Positions 1,840-28,336 of a DNA stretch of 64,000 nucleotides are shown here, one piece after another. The DNA is from Octopus bimaculoides (Eukaryota), in NCBI RefSeq assembly GCF_001194135.2, contig NC_069009.1, positions 9,605,452-9,669,451 of the forward strand, in the 5' to 3' direction. Each line of letters opens with the position of its first letter. Position 1 is the first letter of the stretch. The notes below the pieces were generated by a model. The model ran no database searches. It saw only the letters and a program-made list of their open reading frames with translations, and was not told where the DNA came from. Both the position numbers and the translations under genes were made by a program.

Positions 1840-3285
1840 TACATGTCTCTGACTCTCATCTACCAACCCCAGCTCCCAAGACTGCTGTGGCCCATAACTG
1901 TGTATGAAGGTTCTCTAACAAGGATTGAAACAACTGAACGTAAGATCAATAAGATGGTAAGGAAGTGGCTTGGCCTTTCGAAGTGCCTTTCATCTGTCGC
2001 CCTTTATGGCAACCAGGGTATGCTCCAGTTGCCCCTAGCATCACTAGTAGAGGAGTACAAGGTCTCCAATGGATGCTGTCCGAGACAAAAGGCCACTGTG
2101 ATCCAGGACAATCTACCAGATTTGAACACTGGTAGGAAGTGGAAGGTCACTGAGGCAATGCAGCAGCTTGATGAGATGGCTCAGCATGCTGAAGAGCGTG
2201 GAGGGATGTTAGACAGCAGGGCTGGTGTGGGGCTTGTCAAGAGAGAGCAGTTCTGGTCTGAGTCAACTGAACAAGAATAGTGGAAGTTACGTGAACAACA
2301 AGTAAGGCAGCTGGAAGATGAGAGGCGTCTGGGTCACACAACACAACAAGCACAGTAGGGTCAGTGACTGAATTGGGATGATGTCAAAAAGCTGGAGTTG
2401 AAGTGGTCTGATTGGTGGCAGTTGAGTGCAGGGCATTTGAAAGCTCTGATCTAGACTGCATATGATGTGCATCCATCTCCAGCAAATCTCAAAAAATGGA
2501 GTATCCAATGGAGTCCGCAGTGCCACTTGTGTGGGAAGTATGGCAGTCTCAAACACATGCTATCAGCTTGCCCAAAAGCACTCCAGTCTGGATGGTATAC
2601 ATTCAGACATAATTTAGTGCTAAACGTTGTTGCTTCAGCTGCAAGAGGGGGTCAAGAGCCTGAACTGAGCTTGCATAAGACAGCATTTGTGAAGCAAGGT
2701 GTGAGGCTAAAGAGACAGAACCCTCGGCAGGCCGAAGGCAGAAAATGTGAGGTGTTCGTGGACAAGCCATTGCCTGAAAGCATCGTGGTGTCAGCACTCC
2801 GCCTGACCTGGTGTTGGTTGATGAGGGTCAGAGACATGTGGTCCTTGGGGAGCTTACTGTGCCATGGGAGGAGAGCATTGCTGAGGCCCGTGAGCGGGAG
2901 CTGTTGGGCTATGAAGAGCTGGTAGCTGAGATTCTGAAGAAGGGTTACATCCATGAGCTGGTTGCGTTTGAGGTTGGCTATAAGTGTTTCCCAGCAGCTT
3001 CTCTCAGGTTTCTGAAGGTGACTGGTGTATCCGCTGTGAGGAAGACAATCAAGGAATGTGGGGAGAAAGCAGTTGAGGGTAGTGCTTGGATTACCAGGAG
3101 GTCTGTGAATGCATATAAGGCCACAGAACTGTCACAAGTCTGGCTGCAATGCAATAGGTCCAGCTCTTGTGGGCCACCATGTGGAGAGATACTGAGTTTA
3201 ATGGGCCGAAATCTCGTCAAAGCATGGCACTCAACTGATGGTTGCAACCAGACGAGAAATGGAGCACTCAGTGTTTTCTTCTACT
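1840..3285 (+). mobile_element. Hero-like (restriction-like-endonuclease clade) non-LTR retrotransposon, 5'-truncated and degenerate
   Basis: Post-RT segment LLWPITVYE...KMVRKWLGLSKCLSSVALYG, CCHC finger CHLCGKYGSLKHMLSAC with YTFRHN, then an RLE domain VVLGELTVPWEESIAEARER...FEVGYK. Frameshifted; followed by (TA)n. Confidence 0.85.
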
Positions 3286-3309
3286 ATATATATATATGNN
3301 NNNNNNNNN

Positions 3310-3342
<33 letters not shown>

Positions 3343-3361
3343 ATATACATACACATATATA

Positions 3362-3655
3362 TTATAGCCTCAAGCCAACCAAAGCCTTGTGAGTGGATAT
3401 CGTACACGGAAGCTGAAAGAAGACTGTCATATATGTGTGTATTTGCGCGTGGGTGTGTGTGTCTGTGTTCATACCCCCACCATTACTTGACAACCAATGT
3501 TGCTGTGTTTACATTCCCATCACTTAGCAGTTCGACAAAAGTCACTGATAGAATAAGTACTTGGATTACAAAGAATGAATCCTGTGTTCAATTTGTTCAA
3601 TCAAAGCAGTGCACCAGCATGGCCACATTCACATGACTAAAACAAGTAAAACATG
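3362..3655 (+). mobile_element. tRNA-derived SINE (family B, internal microsatellite), head truncated
   Basis: Shares the core 'ccaaagccttgtgagtggat...ggaa(a/g)ctgaaagaag' and the tail 'cagtgcaccagcatggcc' with many other copies in the window. Confidence 0.7.
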
Positions 3656-3692
3656 CCATTTTAATCCTGAGCAAGGCCGGGTATCTCTGCTA

Positions 3693-3732
<40 letters not shown>

Positions 3733-5304
3733 ATATATATATATATATATATAGGGGGAGAATTCACAAAAAACAAAAGCCGAAGACAGGTGGTGTAGAA
3801 AACAAACAGGTGTATTAGTATAACGCTTGGGAATTGAAACAAGGAGAGAGAGAAAATGTATGTAGTGGCTAGCGATCCATCATGGCGAGAATATATATGT
3901 TTGTATGTATATATAAACACACACACACACACACAATGGGCTTCTTTCAGTTTCTGTTTATCAAATCTATTTAAAAGGCTTTGATTAGCTTGACACTGTA
4001 GTGGAAAACACTTACCCAAGTTGCTACATAGCAGGACTGAACCTGGAAGCATGTGCTTGGAAGTAAACTTCTGAATTAGACAGCAAAACCTACACCTGTT
4101 TTTACAGGCTGTGATTTTGGTTGTCTGTTTTTAAATAATATTTGGGATTTCTGACTCAAAAACAAAAGCAATAACTTTAAACAAGTAATTATGAATGAAG
4201 ATAATGAAATATGAATGTTTCTGAAATTTGTAATTAAATGAAAAATGAGCAAAAATATAACTGAATCAACAAAACTACAATGGCATGTTACCTACTCCAA
4301 ACAACTAGTTTGACACTGGTGGATGAAGCCATATTGGCAGGGTGTAAACAGAGATCAAACTACATTGATCTAGGACCTATTATTGAGCGTTAGGTGAACT
4401 GTTAACAAAATGGCACTCTGTCAGTTACAACAATGAGGGTTCCAGTCGATCCGATCAACGGAACAGCCTGCTCATGAAATTGATAAGCAAGTAGCTAAGC
4501 ACTCCACAGACATGTGTACTCTTCATGTAGTTCTCAGGGAGATTCAGCATGACACAGATTGCGACATGGCTCTGGCCCTTTGAATTGCAGGTACAACTTG
4601 TTTTTACCAGCTGAGTGGACTGAAGCAACGTGGAATAAAGTGTCTTGTCCAAGAACACAATATGCTGCCAGAAATTGAACATAGGACCTTAAGATAGTGA
4701 GCTGAATAACCTAACCACTAAGCCACCACCTTCACAGGTGGACTGATCACGTAGTACACACACACACACAAACAGATATATGTATTATGTGGTTAAGAAG
4801 TTTGCTTCACAGCCCCATGGTTTCGGGTTTCTTCCCACTGCATTTTAAGAATGAAAAATTTATATTCTCAAAAATGAATAAAATGTTTTAAAGACTTATG
4901 TAAAATAATTTGTGAGGTAGAAAGAATGACAATTTAAAACATTTGCAATATTCAACCTCAAAATACTTTCTCTGCAAAATTTCATTGAAATAAATATACT
5001 TTTCAAGAGGTCGAAAAAATGTCAGGAGCACCAAACTGTAGTCATACCCATTATGCTAGGTCTTTCAGAAAGACCAGTAGCTAAGATTAGAATATTTCTA
5101 ACGGATTGAGGGACAACAGAGGTTCTAGTGTGCCCTACAAAAATATACTAAAAATAAACAATCACATTGTTGAAATCTCAAAGCTACGAGATAATGCAGG
5201 ATTAATTCAAAACAATGTGAATAAGTTAGCATTACATTTGACTGAGTAATCTGAATGTGAAAGGGTTAAAATAATAAAAGAATATCTTTTATGTTTTTAT
5301 CATT

Positions 5305-5605
5305 AGACCATGGCCATGCTGGGGCACTGCCTTGAAGAATTTTTAGTTGAATAAATCAACCCCAGTATTTATTTTTCCTTCTCTTGCCAAACTGCAATGT
5401 TATGGAGACATAAACACACCAACACTGGATGTCAAGACAAAGACATGATGGGCTTCATTTAGTTTCTGTCTATCAAATTGACTCAAAAAGTTTTGGTTGG
5501 CCCAAGGGTATGGAAGACACATGTCTAAGGTACAACAGAGTGGGACCGAACCCCAAACAATGTGCTTCGGAAGCAAGCATCTTACCACACAGTCATGGCT
5601 GTGCC
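5305..5605 (-). mobile_element. tRNA-derived SINE (family B)
   Basis: Near full-length copy from 'ggccatgctggggcactgcc' to 'cttaccacacag' (reverse of a tRNA-like head with A/B boxes). Further copies at about 5758-5915(+), 13482-13840(-), 16648-16990(+), 17025-17330(-), 20170-20470(-), 30540-30880(+), 36560-36800(+), 47985-48275(-), 50085-50290(-) and 61845-62010(-). Confidence 0.75.
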
Positions 5606-5919
5606 CATATATTGTTTATGTCATAAGAATTTCAAAACTATGAGAAAACGGGAGGTAATGTCTTTCACGTTTGAACTTGAAAGCCTTCAGTTTTTCCTAT
5701 CAAAAGGAATTTTTAACTCAATTTTCACACACTATTGAGTTCAACTGTTAAAAATGCTTGGCTGTGTGGTAAGAAGTTTGCTTCCCAACTACATGGTTCT
5801 GGGTTCAGTCTCACTCCTAGTACCATGGGCAGATGTCTTCTACTATAGCCTTGGGCCAACCAAAGCTTTGTGAGAGGATTTTGTAGATGGAAACTGAAAG
5901 AAGTCCATCACATATATCA

Positions 5920-6660
5920 TCATCATCATCATTTAGCATCTGCTTTCCATGCTAGCATGGGTTAGACAGTTTGACTAAAAACGGTAAGCCAGGAGAGCTG
6001 CACCAAGTTCCGGTCTGATTTGGCATAGTTTCTACAGCTGGATGCTTCTACTAATGTCAACCACTCCACTCCAAGAATGTAATGGGTGCTTTTTATGTAC
6101 CACGACCATGATTTCACTTGGTTTGGCAAGTCTTCTTAAGCACAGCATATCGCCAAAGGTTTCAGTCACTTATCATCACCTCCATGAAGCCCAATGTTTG
6201 ACGGGTGCTCTTTATATGCCAGTTACATAACACTGGCATCAGCCATAACTACAATCGCACTTGGCTTGACAAGTCTTCTCAAGCACAGCACATCACCAAA
6301 GGTCTCAGTCACTTGTCATCACCTCCATGAGGCCCAATATTCGAAGATCATGCTTCACCACCTCATCTCATGTCCTCCTGGGTCTATCTCTTCTATAGGT
6401 TCCCTCCACAGTTAGAGATTGGCAATTCTTTACAGATATCTTCGTCCATGCGTATCACATGGCCATACCAGTACAGTCGTCTCTTTTGTACACCACATCT
6501 GATGCCTCTTATGCCCAACTTTTCTCTCAAGACACTTACATTCTGTCATACATGCATACTGACATCGCACATCTAGTAAAGCATACTAGCTTCATTTCTT
6601 TCCAGCTTACGCATGTCCTCAGCAGACACAGTCTAGGTTTCACTGCTGTGTAACACCCAA
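5920..6660 (-). mobile_element. RTE-type LINE 3' end with a duplicated ORF2-end segment
   Basis: (CAT)n tail plus 'ccatgctagcatgg' hairpin. The ORF2-end segment 'cacttgg...aagcacagca...ccaaagg...cagtcact...atcacctccatga' occurs twice (about 6175-6200 and 6258-6330). Homologous to 38080-38700. Confidence 0.75.
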
Positions 6661-7489
6661 GGATGTAGGAGCTGTTAGTAACGAAGAGCCTCTCTCTCAG
6701 AATGAAAGGCAGATTGTATGATACCTCTGTATATGTGTGTTTGTCTTTCAGTCAGTGTTCATCCCCCACTACCGCTTGAAAACTGGTGTTGGTGCATTTA
6801 CATCCCCATAATTTAGCAGTTCAGGAAAAGAGATCAACAAAATACCAGCCTTAAACAGAACTACACACTGGGGTTGATTATTTGATTAAAAATTCTTCAA
6901 GGCAGTGCCCCAGTATGGCTGTAGTCTAATGACTGAAATGAGTAAAAGATAAAAGATATATATGTGTGTGTGTATATATATATATGTGCATGTATGTATG
7001 CACAGGGACATGGAAATAGCTGGGTTGGTGTCCAGGCATGCGGTTGGCCCACCAGGAATGGGAGGCACCTCTGTTGTTCTCACATCTCTCTAAGAGAGGG
7101 AAACTCTGAAAGAAAACCTGTGACACTCGCAATATTTGATGATGTAAACTAGTTCTTCTCTTTGAGTTTATGTTGACCATGTTCAGAGAGTGGGATTCGA
7201 TCTGTGCAAGTCCTTTCATTACTATAAAGAATCATCATGCACAGGCACTGCTTGAAAAAAAAGACCCATCACAAAAGGAGCTCGTCGTAGCGATGGCAAT
7301 ACACGAGTTTGAAGTCATCATATGTGTGTGTGTGTGTGTGTACTCTCTGAGTGGTTGGCGTTAGGAAGGGCATCCAGCTGTAGAAACTCTGCCAAATTAG
7401 ATTGGAGCCTGGTGTTGCCATCCGGTTTCACCAGTCCTCAGTCAAATCGTCCAACCCATGCTAGCATGGAAAGCGGATGTTAAACGATG

Positions 7490-7847
7490 NNNNNNNNNNN
7501 NNNNNNNNNNNNNNNNNNNNNNNNNNNNNNNNNNNNNNNNNNNNNNNNNNNNNNNNNNNNNNNNNNNNNNNNNNNNNNNNNNNNNNNNNNNNNNNNNNNN
7601 NNNNNNNNNNNNNNNNNNNNNNNNNNNNNNNNNNNNNNNNNNNNNNNNNNNNNNNNNNNNNNNNNNNNNNNNNNNNNNNNNNNNNNNNNNNNNNNNNNNN
7701 NNNNNNNNNNNNNNNNNNNNNNNNNNNNNNNNNNNNNNNNNNNNNNNNNNNNNNNNNNNNNNNNNNNNNNNNNNNNNNNNNNNNNNNNNNNNNNNNNNNN
7801 NNNNNNNNNNNNNNNNNNNNNNNNNNNNNNNNNNNNNNNNNNNNNNA
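7490..7847. other. Assembly gap (N run)
   Basis: N run. Other gaps at about 3299-3309, 9376-9420, 13553-13633, 25724-25889, 28013-28022, 34654-34911, 36890-37156, 52523-53015 and 61704-61841, mostly next to microsatellites. Confidence 0.95.
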
Positions 7848-8000
7848 ATGGGCTTCTTTCAGTTTCCGTCTACCTCAAATCCACTCACAAGGCTTTTGTC
7901 AGCCTGAGGCTATAGTAGAAGACACTGAACCTGGAATCATGTGGTTGGTAAGCAAGCTACTTACCACACAGCCACTCCTTCGCCTGTATATGTATGTATG

Positions 8001-8044
<44 letters not shown>

Positions 8045-9321
8045 ATCAGTTAACATCTGTTTTTGATGCTGGCATGGGTTGGACAGTATGACAGGAGATG
8101 GCCAGCTGGAGTGCTGCTTGGGCTACAAGTCTGTTTTGGAATGGCTTCTATGGTTGGATGCCCTCCCTAACACCAGCCACTTTACAGAGTGTACTGGGTG
8201 CATTTGAACAACACTGGCACAGGTGCTTTTTACGTGGCATCAGCACCCACAAGCCTGCAAGATTAGAAATGCTCAACTGAAGAGGGATGTAGGGGACACA
8301 CCTGTATTTACCTGGCTTGATGTGTCTTCTAAAGTACAACAAACCAGAAGTCTCTGTCCCCTGTCATCAAACATTGACACTTTGTTCTGAAACAAGCATA
8401 TATTCTCTTCTACACCAGGTTATTAATCTCACAATGCCAATGTAAAATATAACTCTTTGAAACACTTAGTTTTAGAATGGTGGCAGCTGATGAAGGAAAT
8501 GTTCTCTATGTGGCCGGTATGTTTTTGTGCTCTGTTTTTCATTTTGTCCACGTTTTTTTGTGACGTCCTGTACCCAGATATGCATTTACATATACATGTA
8601 GATGTAGGTATGTACATACATGTACGTATATATGCATATACTCACATATTATTTGTATTATTATTATTATATATATATATGTATATATTGAGATGATGAA
8701 ACAAGCCAGTCTACCCACCTATTGCCATTGAGCAACACATTTCCATGGATCCCTACTACTTTCAGCTGTGAATCAGGAACCCCTATTAACTTCTTCTTCT
8801 TGTCTGTGGTTGTTTCTTCTTGCAGACTTGACCCAAGAATTGTCTGAAATTAGTAGAAAATAAATACTGTGATGAGGTGGAGTGGTAGCTCAGAGACAAA
8901 GAGGTTGAAGTTTGTAGGCTACTAACCTTGGGGTGACAGGTATAAAAGGCATGGTCACTCAACATAATAGAAACAGCAGCTAAATCTCTCACAAACATCA
9001 TCATTTAAATCTACTTTTCCCTGCTTGCAAGGGCTTCAACCCATGTTTAAAATGCCCTTCTTGTCACCAAGCCTTACCTGTTTCCAACCAAGGTAATATT
9101 TCCCCACGAATAGATGTTCTCACAAAATATTGGAAATGAATGACAATGACTGTATGACACGCGACTTTGCATAACATATATGTGGATCAAAATACTTACA
9201 AGGTTTTGGATGACCCAAGGCTATAGCAGAAGGCACTTGCACAAGATATCACGTAATGGGACTGAAGCCAGAACCATGTGGTTGGGAAGCAAGCTTCTTT
9301 ATTTCCACACAGTCACGCCTC

Positions 9322-21780: not shown

Positions 21781-22246
21781 AAGGGTGTGGAGTGGAGTGA
21801 AAGCATTTGAAGAGGCCAGGATGATGCAAGCAGGGCTCAAGAGATATTTAAGGAAAAATGTAAAGACTGAGAAGGTGAATGACAAGGACCTGTTTGTGTG
21901 CACAGTCTGTGACAGACCATGTCTGTCCTTGGCTGGCCTCAAATCTCACCTGCGAACCCATGGAAAACAAACCTCATCCAGCTATTCTGATTATATGTCT
22001 GTGCACACGTTTGAATGTGGTGTGTGCCAGAGGGTTTGCAAATCCAATGGGGGTCTTAAAAGACATGTTAGGATCCACAATGAGCAGAACTTACTTGCAG
22101 GTATTGGTAGTGCAAATCAGAGGTGCAATCTGTGTGGGTGTTTTTTCAAAACACTGTCTGGTTTAAAAAGTCACATCAGACGCCATGAAAGGGCTAAGGT
22201 GTAGGTGCAGGAGGTGGTCAAACTCTGTAAGGAGTAGACAACCACC
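21781..22246 (+). mobile_element. 5'-truncated RTE-type LINE end encoding three C2H2 zinc fingers, with target-site duplication
   Basis: Open frame VWSGVKAFEEARM...KR..RK (RTE ORF2 C-terminal motif), then three CxxC-x12-HxxxH fingers with GLKSH/GLKRH. Flanks 'atatacatatacac' (21767-21780) and 'atatatatatacac' (22247-22260) match at 13/14. Confidence 0.75.
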
Positions 22247-25200
22247 ATATATATATACACATTTATTTCTAACAGGCATGAAGTAGTCATGCAAATCCCC
22301 ACATGCTCTATTGACAGAAATAAAGAGAGAGAGAGAAAAAAAGAAGAAAGAAAAAACAATATGAAGCAAAATGAAATTAGGGAATCCAAATTTATTACAA
22401 AAACATTCGCCAGTGCCCTCTGCAACATTCAGGAGACAAAAAATACAAGAGAAATAGCTAAAATGTGAGTTTAAAAAAAGTGGGGAGGGGATTTGAATAA
22501 AGGGGAACAATAATGATATTTTATTAGTGATCCATGCAACATTGTTGGTTAAGGCTAATAAAAGGAGAAGGGGGAGAGAATATAAGGGTGTGCTCTAATA
22601 TCAACATTTGATGGGGAAGTAGGGGGAACAGGACAAAATTAAAACATGGGATGGGGCGGATGGAATAGCCGATGACTCGACCCCAGTACTGTCTGGTACT
22701 TTATTTTATCGACCCCTCCCAGGAAAGGATGAAAGGCAAAGTCAACCCTGGCGGGATTTTCAAACTCAGAACGTAAAGGGATGTAACCAAATACCACAAG
22801 GCACTTCGTTTGGTGCTCTATCGATTCTGGCAATCTACCGCCTGTAAAGTAATAAAAGAGCTTTTTGCTTTTTTTTCTTTTTTGGAATAGACAGATGGTG
22901 GATATTGGAAGAAGGAAAATAATAAAAATTAAAAACTACATGTGCTTATAGCTTGCTTGGAAAAAGAAAAAAAAAAACCCTAATATTCTATATAGGTACA
23001 AATCCTGCACCCTTTTTTTAATTTAAGAAAAAATTTTCAACAAGACAAATGAACAGAAAAAAAAAAGAAAAGAAAAAGTAAACAGTAACATACAACTTGA
23101 AAAAAATCCTCACACACAGGATCGAGATATTGTGGGAGTTATGAAATCCTAAACCGACCCTTTTTCTATGGGGAAATCAATGAAGATATTTATGGAGATT
23201 ATGTGTAGGTAGGTATAGAGTCAACACAAAACAGCTAAGCTAAAAAGGGGAAAAAAGAAAGAAAAAAAATCCATGTCTCCTTCGTCTTCCTAACAACTTA
23301 CAGGACAGAAAACAGATAAAAAAAAAATTAAGAACCCTAAAGCCAAACAACCGGCACAGCACAGCAAGGGTGTGTCTCACCACATACATTTACCTGGGGC
23401 CCCAAATTATCATCCCTGTTTCATAAAACCTACCTGATGCCATCATCACAAGATGGCAAATACTTCATTGCACCTAAAACACTCGTAACTCTTAGGGGCG
23501 TGCACATGTACATACATGTGGTCAGATCAATATATGCAACATTGAAATGTGGTCTTGATGTTAGTTTTTAAAGCTAGATTTAAATGGAAGCTGTTAAGAC
23601 ATCCAAAGTAAAACCAAACAAATTCTTAGAACTTTAACAGAGATGACCCTCCCACCACCTCCATTGTATGACTGAAGGTTTAAGAAAGTGTGTAACTGAT
23701 GAAGATTCTTAAGTAAAAACTGCAAAATTGCTACAAATTTGGTGCCAGATTACTATTTGAAAAGTGGCTCGAGATATTAGTGTCAATACAGTTGACAATA
23801 TTAACGGTTTTGGTGCAAGAAACCTTATATGCTCTACATTCATACAACAGGCTAGAGAGCCACCCCAGCATAATATCAGATACCCCATTCTATTTAACTA
23901 AACTGCCACCTTGTTATGGAAAAACCATGTAGAACACAGCTAGAACGACATTTCTATGAGACCAAAGTAGTCCTCATCTCACAAGAGCTACCCTACACAA
24001 GAATCTAGCATGGTGACAGCAAACCTCATCTTTATGTTTCTGTGGATACAAAGACAGCCTAGCTCACTGCCCGGTACACCCCTAGCTAATGACACCCTTC
24101 ACTGCTAAGAAAGGCTATATACAATTATACATTTATCTGAAGAGACATTCTAAACAGATATGTATAAAAAGAGATATAGGAAAAAAAAAAAAACTTGTTC
24201 AAAAGACTTAACAGTCTTATCAATAAGACTCACAAAATGGACTGGGGGTAGGTGGTGGTGCTGCTATGATGGCAATACCGAGACGCTTCTCAAACCGAAT
24301 TTAGGAACTCTTGAAAAACTGCACAAGGCACTAGTCTGATGAATTGTCAGATAAATTTGATCAACGAGAGCGACGATACTTAAAGCTGATTTATATACAA
24401 ATCTCCTCTCTTCTCCATCTCTCTCTCTCTCTCATCTTCCTTCTTTGCTGCCTATAAAAATACATCCCACCACCAGAAAACTGTGGTGGAAAATATCATA
24501 TATAATCCTTTGGTTTAGTTATTTTCTTTTTTTAAATCCTCTTTGTATGTTGTCTTCATCTTCATCTCAAACTATTCCCTCTTGCTAGTTTTCTCCCCTC
24601 TGTCTCATTACCTCCATTTCTTCGTTATTCAGTGATTTAAATTCTTCGTCTTACCTCAACTCATCTTCATTTCAAAACTTACTCCCTTCTAGTTTTCTCC
24701 CCTCCCTCTCATTAACCTCTTCTTTCCTCTTCATCGTCTTTGGTGCTGCTGTCGTCGAGGAACGGCACACGACAGTCCCCACTGTATCTACAACTCCCTA
24801 CTCCACCATACTGTTAGCTGCGACACGGATACAATCTCCCCCACCCCAAGATGCCATATCAGTGCACCGGGGCGCCTCTACCAAAAGATTCATTCACCCA
24901 CATGGTGCCACATTCATGCACCAGGGGCCTCCACCAAAATCCTCGCCCACCCCCTCAAGTGCTGAGGGAGAGGATTTTTAATGACGTTTTTCACCTCAAA
25001 AAAAATTTTAAATTGTCAACTAAAATTTCCTTATCTCCCCTCTACCTCTTACTCCCCGACTACTCCCTATGCCCCCATCTTTATCTCTTCCACCCCACCT
25101 ATCACGACCCCTACACCTCCGCCTCTATCTCTCTCCCATCTCTTTCTCTCTCTCTCTCTCTCCACCGTTAAACACATTTAAAAAAGAAAAGAAAAGAAAA

Positions 25201-27124
25201 AATATGCAACACATGCATATAATTCAATATACATGCATGCATGAAAAACTTAAAAACAACCAGGAGCAGCCCAAGAAGGGCCCCCCTCCAGGAACATCAA
25301 CAGTTAAGATTGAAAAGCTTCATCTAAACACAATCCAGCTTCTTCCTCTGGCGACCCCTTTTCTGGAAAAATGCAACAGACAAAATTTCAGGGCCATTTT
25401 TAAAATTCATTAAAAAAAAAAAAAAAGAAAAAACCCATCTTACCTCACACTTTAGTGAGTGGAGTGTCACGTTCATGCTCACACTCCAGATTAAAATCTT
25501 TAAAAGCTATAAAAAAAAATTTAAAAAAGCACATCCAGGATGTAGAAAACTACAACTGCTCAGCCGCCACACAGTGGGGTCAGGGGGGCAAGTCTGGTGT
25601 GGGAGGAAATGGATTTAAATGATTTCTCAAAGGGGGGGATTGTATATGAAGCAGGGGAGGGGGAAAAAAGTGAAAGGAATAATGCCAAGTGACACTGGGT
25701 CAACATATCTATATCTACTGTCANNNNNNNNNNNNNNNNNNNNNNNNNNNNNNNNNNNNNNNNNNNNNNNNNNNNNNNNNNNNNNNNNNNNNNNNNNNNN
25801 NNNNNNNNNNNNNNNNNNNNNNNNNNNNNNNNNNNNNNNNNNNNNNNNNNNNNNNNNNNNNNNNNNNNNNNNNNNNNNNNNNNNNNNNNTATATATATAT
25901 ATATATATATATGATTGGTACCTATTTTACCGCCCCTCAGAAAGACAAAAGGCAAATTTGACCCTGATGCAATATGAAATCAAAATGTGAAGAGGCCTCA
26001 CTGAAACCACAACTCTAGTGATCCTGCTAACCACAGCCATTACAATTAAGCTACCACACCAAGTGTCTCACAAGGGGTATACATCAGTTAAGATTAAAAG
26101 ACTAGACTTTAGGGGGGTTAATAAAACAAAGTGTGCTTGGGAAATATGCACTGTGGTAGTACTGCTACCCACTCCCTGCAGAATACTCTGGTTAAGTAAG
26201 AAACTTAGACAAAGCAGGACCTTCTTTGAAATTATTTGCATCTTGAGTCACATTAGATCTTTCACATGTTAATATTGATGTTTATTGGATGGTTAAGTGG
26301 AAAATGAAATATAATCAATAACTACTCTTTACAGTCACCACACAAACATTAAAGCAGTCTGTGTGCACATATATATTTATCTAATCTATCTATTTATAGC
26401 ATCTGCCTATAATTATTCTGGAGAACATTGACATGAATGTGGGCTTCAGAGTAAGCTGAGGCCTACAATTTCAGACAAACCGTAAAGCAGCCTCCTTATG
26501 ACCTTCAATGTTTGCAGTCAAGGTCATTGCACATGCAATCAGTATATCACTCTACAGACATCTACCCTAATAGTCTCCTAAAGCTAACTTGAACTGGCTT
26601 TTCAAATATTAAATAGCAAATCCTGCAGATGGCACTTCTGCTTGCCTGCATACGTTCAAGTGAACCCCTACCCACTCCCCATGGGTAAAAATTAGTTTTA
26701 GACAGACATACTTTATCTTGTCCATTATTTTTACTATAGCCATTAAGAATTAATTCTAATACACCACAGTGATCCCACAGATTTAGAATATATATATATA
26801 TACATACATACACACCTGCAGGCACATTCAATTGCCTCCCCTTTTACAGAGAATGAGTTTTTTTTTTTTAAATAATTTACACAGGGCAATTGACACAAAC
26901 TAAAGACAAGCCTCCCCTCTGGTGCTACTCAGATTTCACATTTCTGCTCTGCATAGGGAATGAAATTGGCTAGCATCAAAAGGAATCATTAGTCTCAACA
27001 AATGCAAACTCCATATATACAGTTAATTGTCAGATAAATTTGTTAATTTCTTTCCAAAGTTATCTGAATGAACACAAAAAATATTTGTGTTTTATGTAGC
27101 TCTGTTCTTACTCTACATCTTTTG

Positions 27125-27130
27125 TTTATT
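27125..27130 (-). promoter_or_regulatory. Proximal polyadenylation signal (AATAAA) of the CNBP-like gene
   Basis: AATAAA about 1 kb after the stop codon, with upstream TGTA motifs and a U/GU-rich element (TTTTTTGTGTTC) about 45 nt downstream. Further minus-strand AATAAA at 26281, 22520, 22391 and 22262. Confidence 0.55.
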
Positions 27131-27885
27131 GGTTTTGAAATTTAAATAAACTTTCACTTTCAATCAAGGTTCCAAAACCGCCCAAGGTATTTGTGTTGTG
27201 TACAGAGGTATGATCTTTCTGATGCACTACATTTCAGCCAGCCTGTTCAATTCAGTGAAGATCAATTGGAGGATTCATTCACAAAGGATCCACCATGGAA
27301 TTAGTACAGCAGTTGGAAATAAAATAAACAAATTTATCTGACAATCCAACATAAGTAATTTTCTCCTACACTGTGTTGATGCTATTAACAGTTTAAATGT
27401 TTAAGACAGACGAGAATAAGATTAAAAAAGGGTCCAGTCTTCTCTGCATGTTTAAGAGGTGTTCATTTGTTGGTAGACTGCCACAGACCAGGCTGTCAGC
27501 TACAAAAAAAACCCCTTTTTTCTACAGAGGGCAGAGGTATGAAGGATGTGGCAGCAGAAATACTACTAAATTCATGGTTTTGAGTGAAAAAAATCTTTCA
27601 AGGACGGGCTAAAGGAGTGTTTTAATTTACCCCACAACTTTCAAGGAACAAAGGGTGTTTCTGCAATTAATTTATAGTGTAAGTAGTAAGCCCCAAAGAA
27701 ATAGGGATGAGAGCAGTGGTGAAGTTGTTTAGTCTATCAAAGAAATTTATAATAAAAAAGATAAAAGCTCGAAATCTACAAAAGAAAAAGAATTGCTGGC
27801 TTTTTAGTAGGAATAACTTGTTTTGAGGGAGGGGGGATTAAAAAAAAAAACTTCGGAGGGGGGAGTGTGTGGCTCCACAGCATAT

Positions 27886-28000
27886 TTAGAGCACCTGGTT
27901 GTTACAATCCCTAGCATAGTGGCCTGTCGCCCTGCATGTATAGCACTGGGTTAGATTTAAACTAGGACACTCCTTGGCCAAGTGATCACTTTCACCACAC
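27886..28000 (-). other. Identical second copy of the CNBP-like last coding exon (probable assembly or haplotype duplication)
   Basis: About 27839-28012 is identical to about 28074-28247 (235-bp offset). The two copies are separated by a 10-N gap at 28013-28022. Confidence 0.8.
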
Positions 28001-28120
28001 CTAAAAGGCAAANNNNNNNNNNCTTTTGGGGGGATGGGTTGGTTTCTAAGAGCAGCACGCAAAACAAAATATTTAAAAAAAAAAACTTCGGAGGGGGGAG
28101 TGTGTGGCTCCACAGCATAT

Positions 28121-28235
28121 TTAGAGCACCTGGTTGTTACAATCCCTAGCATAGTGGCCTGTCGCCCTGCATGTATAGCACTGGGTTAGATTTAAACTAG
28201 GACACTCCTTGGCCAAGTGATCACTTTCACCACAC
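28121..28235 (-). CDS. CNBP: CNBP-like CCHC zinc-knuckle protein, coding exon 4 (last)
   Basis: Acceptor tttgccttttAG; phase 2 completes K in CYK|CGESDHLAKEC. Then PSLNLTQ-CYTCRATGHYARDC-NNQVL, with TAA at 28121-28123. Confidence 0.9.
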
Positions 28236-28336
28236 CTAAAAGGCAAACAGAAACATGAAATTAGATTACATAACTGAGGAGAAAGAGAAAACAAAAAAAA
28301 AAAGAGAAAACAAGAAAAAGAGAGAGAGCTACTAAC

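What the first reader, a model, noticed from the sequence alone, without database searches (positions are those of the whole stretch)
24342..27350. Docking-site/selector-like competing RNA duplexes downstream of the CNBP stop codon
Seen: the 17-mer ATTGTCAGATAAATTTG occurs at 24343-24359 and 27026-27042, and its reverse complement lies within 27327-27345. The 27026-27044 / 27327-27345 pair is a perfect 19-bp inverted repeat that extends imperfectly to about 36 bp (27022-27057 with 27313-27350). On the minus-strand transcript, the first element (about 27345) can pair with either the proximal partner (about 280-nt loop) or the distal partner (about 3-kb loop), but not both. None of the three sites is in a recognisable TE. 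The proximal loop contains the first AATAAA, and the distal loop contains the first two. Established: competing docking/selector duplexes control mutually exclusive processing in Dscam-type genes, and long dsRNA is the ADAR substrate, with editing extensive in coleoids. Inference: an RNA-structure switch controlling alternative polyadenylation, 3'UTR architecture or editing of CNBP mRNA, which I do not know to have been described.
Basis: partly seen in the sequence, partly recalled or inferred. Interest (0 to 1): 0.8.

Follow-up and report, generated by a model that had tools for sequence, protein, structure and literature searches.

The report
Edited transposon hairpin in CNBP 3'UTR
The inverted repeat behind the CNBP-type gene is the pair of terminal repeats of a small dispersed transposon-like element that folds into a hairpin in the mRNA and is edited by ADAR, which is an ordinary situation in octopus, and I found no sign of a structural switch with the third copy.

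Summary
The sequence observation is real. The 17-mer occurs three times, and the 27026-27044 / 27327-27345 pair is a perfect 19-bp inverted repeat that extends to about 33-34 nt. The claim that no site lies in a transposable element is wrong for this pair. In four DNA runs about 125 contigs from other loci match the arms and adjacent interior. That is roughly 60-70 genome equivalents for the left arm. The similarity stops at the outer ends of the repeat, and other copies join both arms over different interiors. This is a MITE-like element of about 320 bp.

RNA-seq shows it is transcribed within a long minus-strand 3'UTR. Six of seven T>C (sense A>G) sites in 641 nt fall in the two arms, at 4-14%, and all are paired in the predicted stem. 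So the proximal hairpin forms in vivo and is an ADAR substrate.

The distal copy is an isolated 18-23-nt match. No editing was detected in it at the 2% listing threshold. In the 3.25-kb ensemble its pairing probability is about 0.0003, against about 0.99 for the proximal partner. Continuity across the assembly gap is unproven. Conservation could not be tested.

Verdict: a new member of a known kind; the switch is unsupported.

The parts
27026..27345 (.). MITE-like non-coding element of about 320 bp (68% A+T) with terminal inverted repeats, inserted in the 3'UTR
   Evidence: Other-locus DNA contigs match 27017-27209 and 27298-27363 and nothing outside. 26 contigs diverge at 27027 and others at 27345-27353. 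Contigs from other copies join the left arm to the right arm over other interiors (repeated). No ORF exceeds 47 aa. No convincing target-site duplication.
27313..27346 (-). 5' arm of the RNA hairpin (right terminal repeat). Edited A at 27334, 27335 and 27339.
   Evidence: pairing probability 0.9-1.0 with 27025-27057. T>C at 4%, 14% and 4% pooled over three runs. The arm splits into variant contigs with 2-4 differences in run X16.
27025..27058 (-). 3' arm of the RNA hairpin (left terminal repeat). Edited A at 27035, 27040 and 27047. It also holds a small local hairpin (27030-27041 / 27056-27067).
   Evidence: T>C at 11%, 4% and 10%. Variant contigs in X17 and X19. The local hairpin is -10.9 kcal/mol.
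27059..27312 (-). 254-nt loop of the hairpin, interior of the element. It carries the first minus-strand AATAAA (27130-27125).
   Evidence: Weak clusters of left-hand molecule ends at 27105 (X23) and 27100 (X24), 20-25 nt downstream of the signal, but no clear fall in depth.
24337..24359 (-). Distal solitary copy of the terminal 17-mer (core 24343-24359), in otherwise unique sequence
   Evidence: No other-locus DNA match at 80% or more in 24212-24400. No T>C was listed inside it at the 2% threshold. Pairing probability with the right arm is about 0.0003.
25724..25889 (.). Assembly gap between the distal copy and the hairpin
   Evidence: RNA reads enter it from the left with one consistent sequence that is absent from the window. 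The right edge is (TA)n. No bridging read or contig.
28121..28123 (-). Stop codon of the CCHC zinc-knuckle (CNBP-type) gene. A second copy at 27886-27888 lies in a duplicated assembly block.
   Evidence: ORFs. Five zf-CCHC knuckles in the last two exons. Splice 28233>28335 and RNA contigs with 165 other letters between 27851 and 28023.
22379..22396 (-). Probable terminal poly(A) signal (AATAAA at 22396-22391) and cleavage region (about 22379) of the long minus-strand transcript
   Evidence: Left-hand molecule ends at 22379/22380 and 22408, with a coverage trough at 22240-22409. Signal position.

Best explanation
A non-coding, MITE-like DNA-transposon relic of about 320 bp (27026-27345) sits in the long 3'UTR of a CNBP-type CCHC zinc-knuckle gene on the minus strand. 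When the mRNA is made, the element's two terminal inverted repeats fold back on each other. They form a stem of about 33 bp (19 bp perfect) that closes a 254-nt loop. ADAR deaminates several adenosines in both strands of this stem at roughly 4-14% in the raw-read samples. The editing appears heavier in some other samples, judging from variant contigs. The third copy, about 2.7-3 kb downstream, is an isolated 18-23-nt match to the same terminus. It is most likely a remnant of the same family, for example from local transposition, and it plays no detectable structural role. Shown here: the repeat-family membership of the arms, transcription, and editing clustered in the arms. Inferred: that ADAR is the enzyme, the origin of the distal copy, and that all three sites sit on one RNA molecule.
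For: Repeat family: at 80% likeness, 126-127 DNA contigs per run from other loci match only 27017-27209 and 27298-27363. Summed word depth over 27034-27055 is 891, 567 and 3693, against my estimate of about 13, 10 and 52 for single-copy contigs. That is about 60-70 copies for the left arm and about 12-14 for the right arm. 26 contigs break at 27027 with unrelated flanks (agreement 0.49). Seven or more single-copy contigs join the left arm to the right arm with other spacings (the same pattern in X15, and in raw DNA reads). Flanks and the distal region give zero such matches. Structure: MFE -95 kcal/mol, z = -3.8. Arm pairing probability is 0.9-1.0 in a 3.25-kb partition function. Transcription: RNA contigs run continuously from the coding exons to 25917, and one contig covers 26960-27400 without a difference. 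Editing: T>C at 27035, 27040, 27047, 27334, 27335 and 27339 in three runs, carried by reads with no other difference, and no A>G apart from 27068 in one run, which I read as a SNP. Six of 7 T>C sites fall in arms that hold 27 of 205 T positions (p = 2e-5), and none has a 5' G. In deep runs only the arms break into many 49-62-nt variant contigs. Literature: hyper-editing across Metazoa mostly targets dsRNA formed by inverted or palindromic repeats, and octopus ranks highest (PMC5625713).
Against: No clear target-site duplication flanks the element, and I could not assign its superfamily. The SNP alternative is excluded only by the low fractions, strand consistency, clustering and reference letters in other RNA runs. 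The nature of the differences in the variant contigs was not listed. An exact 18-nt match 2.7 kb away, in unique sequence, is not explained by a simple single insertion.
Confidence: 0.8

Rival explanations
1. The right arm acts as a docking site that pairs either with the proximal or with the distal 17-mer. This mutually exclusive choice would control poly(A) site use, 3'UTR architecture or editing.
For: Formal complementarity exists for both partners. Bimolecular duplex energies are similar (-41.1 against -38.5 kcal/mol). The transcript at the distal site is probably minus-strand too, because the low-fraction changes there are T>C rather than A>G. One T>C site (24332, 3-6%) lies 5 nt outside the distal arm.
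Against: In the full-length ensemble the distal pairing has probability of about 0.0003. No T>C was listed within 24343-24359 at the 2% threshold, at depth 200-420. The left-arm editing can only come from proximal pairing. The arms are transposon termini. Depth is about 4 times higher at the distal site than at the hairpin, so most molecules that carry the distal copy may lack the upstream partner. Continuity across the gap is unproven. Position 24332 is paired with 24574, outside any distal duplex, in the single 3.25-kb MFE structure.
Confidence: 0.04
2. The transposon-derived hairpin has been co-opted locally. By enclosing the element's own AATAAA (27130-27125) and its cleavage site in a 254-nt loop, or by recruiting dsRNA-binding proteins, it modulates use of that proximal poly(A) site or mRNA stability. 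The distal copy is not involved.
For: Molecule left ends cluster at 27105 (X23) and 27100 (X24), 20-25 nt downstream of the AATAAA. In X19, contig depth falls from 2919-8216 (27048-27332) to 1341 and then 201 further downstream. Read depth over 26916-27407 is about half that of both flanks in X22 and X23.
Against: The end clusters are small (7-8 molecules) and appear in one mate orientation only. Bulk depth barely changes across 27100. The X19 profile is also explained by oligo-dT priming on the A12 tract of the RNA at 26851-26862, where a contig starts at 26858.
Confidence: 0.1
3. The distal copy and the right arm are the outer termini of an older element of about 3 kb (24337-27351). The left arm would be an internal or nested copy, so the hairpin is a by-product of a composite element.
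For: Complementarity between the distal copy and the right arm extends 6 nt outward with 4 of 6 matches, which the left arm does not share. Some family copies match the right side out to 27353.
Against: Four of 6 matches is weak. No other-locus DNA matches the distal flank inward of 24359. The interior 24360-27025 shows no family signal apart from microsatellites. Family boundaries fall at 27027, not further left.
Confidence: 0.06

Closest known systems
Inverted-repeat or palindromic transposon dsRNA in 3'UTRs edited by ADAR (inverted Alu pairs in human; the palindromic Harbinger repeat in frog; hyper-edited repeats in Octopus bimaculoides; PMC5625713)
   Same: A repeat-derived intramolecular duplex inside a transcript. 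Clustered A>G changes on the sense strand in both arms. No 5' G before any edited A. Located in non-coding sequence.
   Different: The stem is short (about 33 bp, 19 perfect) compared with the roughly 300-bp Alu duplexes. Editing per site is modest (4-14%) in the raw-read samples. The substrate is a single element pairing with itself rather than two copies.
[quoted passage not shown]
   Same: Small (320 bp), A+T-rich and non-coding. Terminal inverted repeats. Tens of dispersed copies with conserved termini and variable interiors. Sits in a gene's UTR.
   Different: No recognisable target-site duplication, so the superfamily is unassigned. Copy number is modest (about 60-70 at 80% likeness or more).
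Docking-site / selector-sequence competing RNA structures of Dscam1-type mutually exclusive splicing (PMC6071210, PMC7430681)
   Same: One sequence has two complementary partners that cannot both pair with it.
   Different: The sites are in a 3'UTR, not in introns next to an exon cluster. There is no array of alternative exons. There is no evidence that the second pairing forms, and it is about 3000-fold disfavoured at equilibrium. The motifs are transposon termini. Conservation is untested.
RNA structures that set poly(A) site use (the HIV-1 poly(A) hairpin that occludes AAUAAA; the HTLV-1 Rex-response element that brings AAUAAA close to its cleavage site), recalled from my own knowledge and not checked here
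   Same: A stem flanks a poly(A) signal.
   Different: Here both the signal and its cleavage site lie in a large loop, neither occluded nor brought together. No functional evidence.

Membership tests
MITE / non-autonomous TIR element | Terminal inverted repeats at the element's ends | tested here: met
   33-nt arms at 85% complementarity with a 19-bp perfect core. Family similarity ends at 27027 and at 27345-27353.
MITE / non-autonomous TIR element | Small size and no coding capacity | tested here: met
   320 bp. The longest ORF is 47 aa. 68% A+T.
MITE / non-autonomous TIR element | Multiple dispersed genomic copies that share termini | tested here: met
   About 126 other-locus contigs per DNA run. 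About 60-70 genome equivalents over the left arm. Flanks are unrelated (agreement 0.49). Contigs from other copies join both arms.
MITE / non-autonomous TIR element | Target-site duplication flanking the termini | tested here: not met
   No symmetric direct repeat at the inferred boundaries. The best is 5 nt (TAATT) at asymmetric offsets. TTAA lies on the left only.
ADAR-edited intramolecular dsRNA | A stable duplex of about 20 bp or more within one transcript | tested here: met
   Predicted only: z = -3.8 and pairing probability about 0.99. Both arms lie on one RNA contig.
ADAR-edited intramolecular dsRNA | A>G changes on the sense strand, clustered in both arms, with 5' G avoided | tested here: met
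   Six T>C sites in the arms in three runs. Enrichment p = 2e-5. 5' neighbours are U, A, A, A, U and C.
ADAR-edited intramolecular dsRNA | The changes are absent from genomic DNA of the same individual | tested here: inconclusive
   No true-locus DNA reads or contigs were laid over the arms. RNA contigs of other runs carry the reference letters.
Docking/selector competing RNA structures | One docking sequence complementary to two or more selector sequences | tested here: met
   The right arm is complementary to the left arm (33 nt) and to the distal copy (23 nt).
Docking/selector competing RNA structures | Each alternative pairing actually forms and selects a distinct processing outcome | tested here: not met
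   Distal pairing probability is about 0.0003. No editing was listed in the distal copy at the 2% threshold. No alternative exons, and no marked change in depth at the first AATAAA.
Docking/selector competing RNA structures | Conservation with compensatory changes across species | not testable with these tools
   The only other-species run (X21) gave no orthologous contig even for the coding exons. The protein search returned no hit above 71% identity and none named as cephalopod.
CNBP (cellular nucleic-acid-binding protein) | Small protein made of tandem CCHC zinc knuckles | tested here: met
   Five zf-CCHC matches in 105 aa of the last two exons, E = 5e-33. The best named relative is the Leishmania universal minicircle sequence binding protein, 51% identity. 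Orthology to CNBP proper was not established.

The most novel reading that the evidence does not exclude
The transposon-derived, ADAR-edited hairpin is a co-opted regulatory element. By looping out the transposon-borne AATAAA at 27130-27125 and its cleavage site near 27100, and with editing tuning the stem's stability, it would set the ratio between a short 3'UTR isoform (about 1 kb) and a long one (about 5.5 kb) of the CNBP-type mRNA. The distal 17-mer could act as a backup partner once the proximal stem is edited or unwound.
Probability: 0.05. Interest if true: 0.6.

Novelty: new member of a known kind. Interest (0 to 1): 0.15.

Why it matters
As it stands, this is one more example of a very common class in octopus: a repeat-derived hairpin in a UTR that ADAR edits. 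It is useful as a worked case for two reasons. An apparently unique perfect inverted repeat with a third copy nearby can still be transposon termini. Editing in the arms shows that a duplex forms, but not that it regulates anything. It would matter more if the hairpin were shown to govern use of the poly(A) signal it encloses. That would link transposon insertion, ADAR editing and 3'UTR length choice in a cephalopod.

Tried and rejected
- Other copies of the element or of the distal flank inside the 64-kb window: none beyond the three sites.
- Known RNA families in 22300-28300: none (one chance-level bacterial sRNA hit, E = 0.31).
- Orthologue from another species: run X21 (organism B) laid at 80% likeness gave only low-complexity matches, not even the coding exons. 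The protein search returned no hit above 71% identity and none named as cephalopod. No conservation test was possible.
- SNP check with DNA: the DNA runs that hold the locus according to the index gave no true-locus contig over the arms. Raw DNA reads were too sparse.
- An apparent depth spike of 14-30 times over the left arm in X19 and X17: it looked like a small RNA. It turned out to be largely the summed depth of many overlapping short variant contigs. One 60-nt contig at 8216 remains unexplained.
- A contig junction at 25436 (TGTGGCTTACC...) shared by X1 and X8: the continuation is not in the window, and no canonical splice site lies there. Left unresolved.
- Target-site duplication scan: nothing convincing.
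- Assembly artefact as the source of the inverted repeat: rejected, because RNA contigs of independent runs reproduce 26960-27400 exactly.
Full report
**Observation**

The 17-mer ATTGTCAGATAAATTTG is at 24343-24359 (+), 27026-27042 (+) and 27329-27345 (-). With up to two mismatches there are three matches against 0.04 expected, and no shuffle reaches three. The proximal pair is a perfect 19-bp inverted repeat (27026-27044 / 27327-27345). It extends to 33 nt at 85% complementarity, with 254 nt between the arms. The distal copy pairs with 27329-27351 over 23 nt at 91%. Further ones lie at 22705, 22525 and 22396.

**Gene context**

The last two coding exons on the minus strand encode five CCHC zinc knuckles. 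The best named relative is the Leishmania universal minicircle sequence binding protein. 'CNBP-type' is therefore reasonable, but orthology was not proven. An exact 175-nt duplication (27838-28012 = 28073-28247) flanks a 10-N gap. RNA contigs carry 165 other letters there. So the true stop codon is at 28121-28123, and the hairpin lies about 770 nt into the 3'UTR.

**The assembly gap (25724-25889)**

RNA reads from three runs continue from 25723 into one consistent sequence, GCTTTATTATCATTATTATTTCCAAG, which is absent from the window. The right edge is a (TA)n tract at which RNA contigs stop. Both sides are transcribed at comparable depth. No read or contig bridges the gap. The spacing of about 3 kb and the co-linearity of the distal copy with the hairpin are plausible but unproven.

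**What the arms are**

I laid DNA contigs of three independent runs and raw DNA reads on 26880-27520 at 80% likeness.
- This gave 126-127 contigs per run, all from other loci (none at 99% or more).
- They match only 27017-27209 and 27298-27363. The flanks have zero depth.
- Summed word depth over 27034-27055 is 891, 567 and 3693. My estimate of single-copy depth, from the depths of the listed contigs, is about 13, 10 and 52. That gives roughly 60-70 genome equivalents. The right arm has about 12-14.
- Twenty-six contigs diverge at 27027 into unrelated flanks (agreement 0.49). Others diverge at 27345-27353.
- At least seven single-copy contigs join a left-arm match directly to a right-arm match over other spacings (27054>27326, 27069>27327, 27074>27321, 27150>27322, 27154>27317, 27178>27327, 27207>27331).
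- The same picture appears in X15 and as paralogous reads in RNA.

This is the anatomy of a small element with terminal inverted repeats and variable interiors, that is, a MITE-like family. Most copies differ from the window in the arm (27041 C, 27045 C/T, 27046 G, 27058 T, 27064 T). Only about a third share T at 27041. I found no target-site duplication, so the superfamily is open. The distal region 24212-24400 gave no other-locus match under the same settings. No further similarity to the element was found in the window. The distal site is therefore a solitary 18-23-nt terminus match.

**Transcription and strand**

RNA contigs run without a break from the coding exons to 25917. Left of the gap, coverage continues to about 22410.
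- Left-hand molecule ends lie at 22379/22380 and 22408. A minus-strand AATAAA lies at 22396-22391.
- The raw libraries are unstranded. However, low-fraction changes across 21900-27500 are T>C (21977, 22872/3, 23710, 24332, 26025, 26095, 26225/6, 26464 and the arm sites), with no comparable A>G. This points to a minus-strand RNA throughout.
- A single 3'UTR of about 5.5 kb is the simplest reading.
- Depth rises about four-fold below about 25430. About 30% of molecules have a right end exactly at 24073, followed by adapter sequence. Many RNAs that carry the distal copy may therefore not include the hairpin.

**Structure**

The minus-strand RNA 27380-26990 folds at -95 kcal/mol, with shuffles averaging -76.6 (z = -3.8), and the arms are paired. 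Bimolecular duplex energies of the right arm with the proximal and the distal partner are similar (-41.1 and -38.5). In the partition function of the 3.25-kb RNA, however, the right arm pairs with the proximal partner at probability 0.9-1.0. It pairs with the distal one at about 0.0003.

**Editing**

In three RNA-seq runs, reads with no other difference show T>C at six positions. No A>G appears apart from 27068 in one run, which I read as a SNP.

| Position | Arm | Pooled T>C |
|---|---|---|
| 27035 | left | 11% |
| 27040 | left | 4% |
| 27047 | left | 10% |
| 27334 | right | 4% |
| 27335 | right | 14% |
| 27339 | right | 4% |

- Six of the seven T>C sites in 641 nt fall in arms that hold 27 of 205 T positions (hypergeometric p = 2e-5).
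- None has a 5' G, and all six are base-paired in the predicted stem.
- In deep contig runs only the arms break into many 49-62-nt variant contigs. For example, in X16 the right arm has depth 561 unchanged, against 414, 327 and 295 with 2-4 differences. The loop and flanks are single clean contigs. The listing did not show which letters differ in these variants.
- Left-arm editing can only arise from proximal pairing, because the left arm and the distal copy have the same sense.
- No T>C was listed inside 24343-24359 at the 2% threshold, at depth 200-420 per run. Only 24332, five bases outside the copy, shows 3-6%. In the single 3.25-kb MFE structure it is paired with 24574.
- DNA from the same animals over the arms was not obtained, so a SNP origin is excluded only indirectly.

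**Polyadenylation**

Depth barely changes across the first signal's expected cleavage zone in the three bulk runs. Small clusters of left ends at 27105 and 27100, and the uneven profile of X19, hint at some use of this site. An A12 tract in the RNA at 26851-26862 offers an internal-priming explanation for X19. The first AATAAA lies inside the transposon, so the element brought it in.

**Comparison and verdict**

The literature describes exactly this class. Hyper-editing across animals mainly targets dsRNA made by inverted or self-complementary repeats, and Octopus bimaculoides has the strongest signal (PMC5625713). Pairing of nearby inverted repeats is described as the conventional source of long dsRNA editing substrates (PMC9989829).

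Docking/selector systems are intronic, tied to exon arrays, and conserved with covariation (PMC6071210, PMC7430681). Here only the formal 'one site, two partners' feature is met.

I conclude that the finding is a transposon-derived hairpin edited by ADAR, in the 3'UTR of a CNBP-type gene. It is real and not described for this locus as far as I could see, but it is of a known kind. The switch hypothesis is unsupported, though not formally excluded.

Noticed in passing
window 27838-28247: An exact 175-nt duplication (27838-28012 = 28073-28247) of the last coding exon and stop codon flanks a 10-N gap. RNA contigs have 165 other letters between 27851 and 28023, so this looks like a mis-assembly rather than a real duplication.
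   Followed up: partly
window 24073: About 30% of RNA-seq molecules in three runs have their right-hand end exactly at 24073, followed directly by adapter with no poly(A). This may be a discrete 5' end (cleavage site or internal start) of a minus-strand RNA within the distal 3'UTR.
   Followed up: no
window 24950-25440: RNA depth steps up about four-fold going from 25440 to 24950, which is the 3' direction on the minus strand. Contigs of two runs share a junction at 25436 to a sequence (TGTGGCTTACCATTCC...) that is not in the window. This could be a separate transcript, a mis-assembly or 3' bias.
   Followed up: partly
window 21785-22204 (+): An expressed ORF of 139 aa with three C2H2 zinc fingers (Pfam zf-C2H2). 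It is separated from the long minus-strand transcript by a coverage trough at 22240-22409. More than half of the reads carry a 1-nt insertion at 22140.
   Followed up: partly
window 23710; 26225-26226; 26025; 26095; 26464; 22872-22873: Further sense-strand A>G (T>C) sites in the same 3'UTR, outside the finding. 23710 is at 11-13% (39% of contig depth in X16). 26226 is fixed as C in the X16 contig but at 0-20% in the raw-read runs. The duplexes responsible were not sought.
   Followed up: no
window 26851-26862 and 26858-27332: The minus-strand RNA has an A12 tract here. In run X19 a contig starts at 26858 and depth upstream is 7-40 times that downstream. This looks like internal oligo-dT priming, and it complicates any reading of poly(A) site use.
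   Followed up: no
window 27048-27107: In X19 a 60-nt contig identical to the window has depth 8216, against 2919 and 1341 for its neighbours. Overlap of variant contigs does not explain this. It may be a paralogue with the same letters or a stable fragment.
   Followed up: partly
window 26916-27407: Read depth over the hairpin region is about half that of both flanks (about 65-95 against about 150 in X22). No deletion joints were seen. Possible causes are under-representation of structured RNA, A+T bias, or loss of heavily edited reads.
   Followed up: partly
window 24556-24714: A direct repeat of about 105 nt period (24556-24610 against 24661-24714, 92-94% identical) in a C+T-rich stretch just upstream of the distal copy on the + strand.
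   Followed up: no
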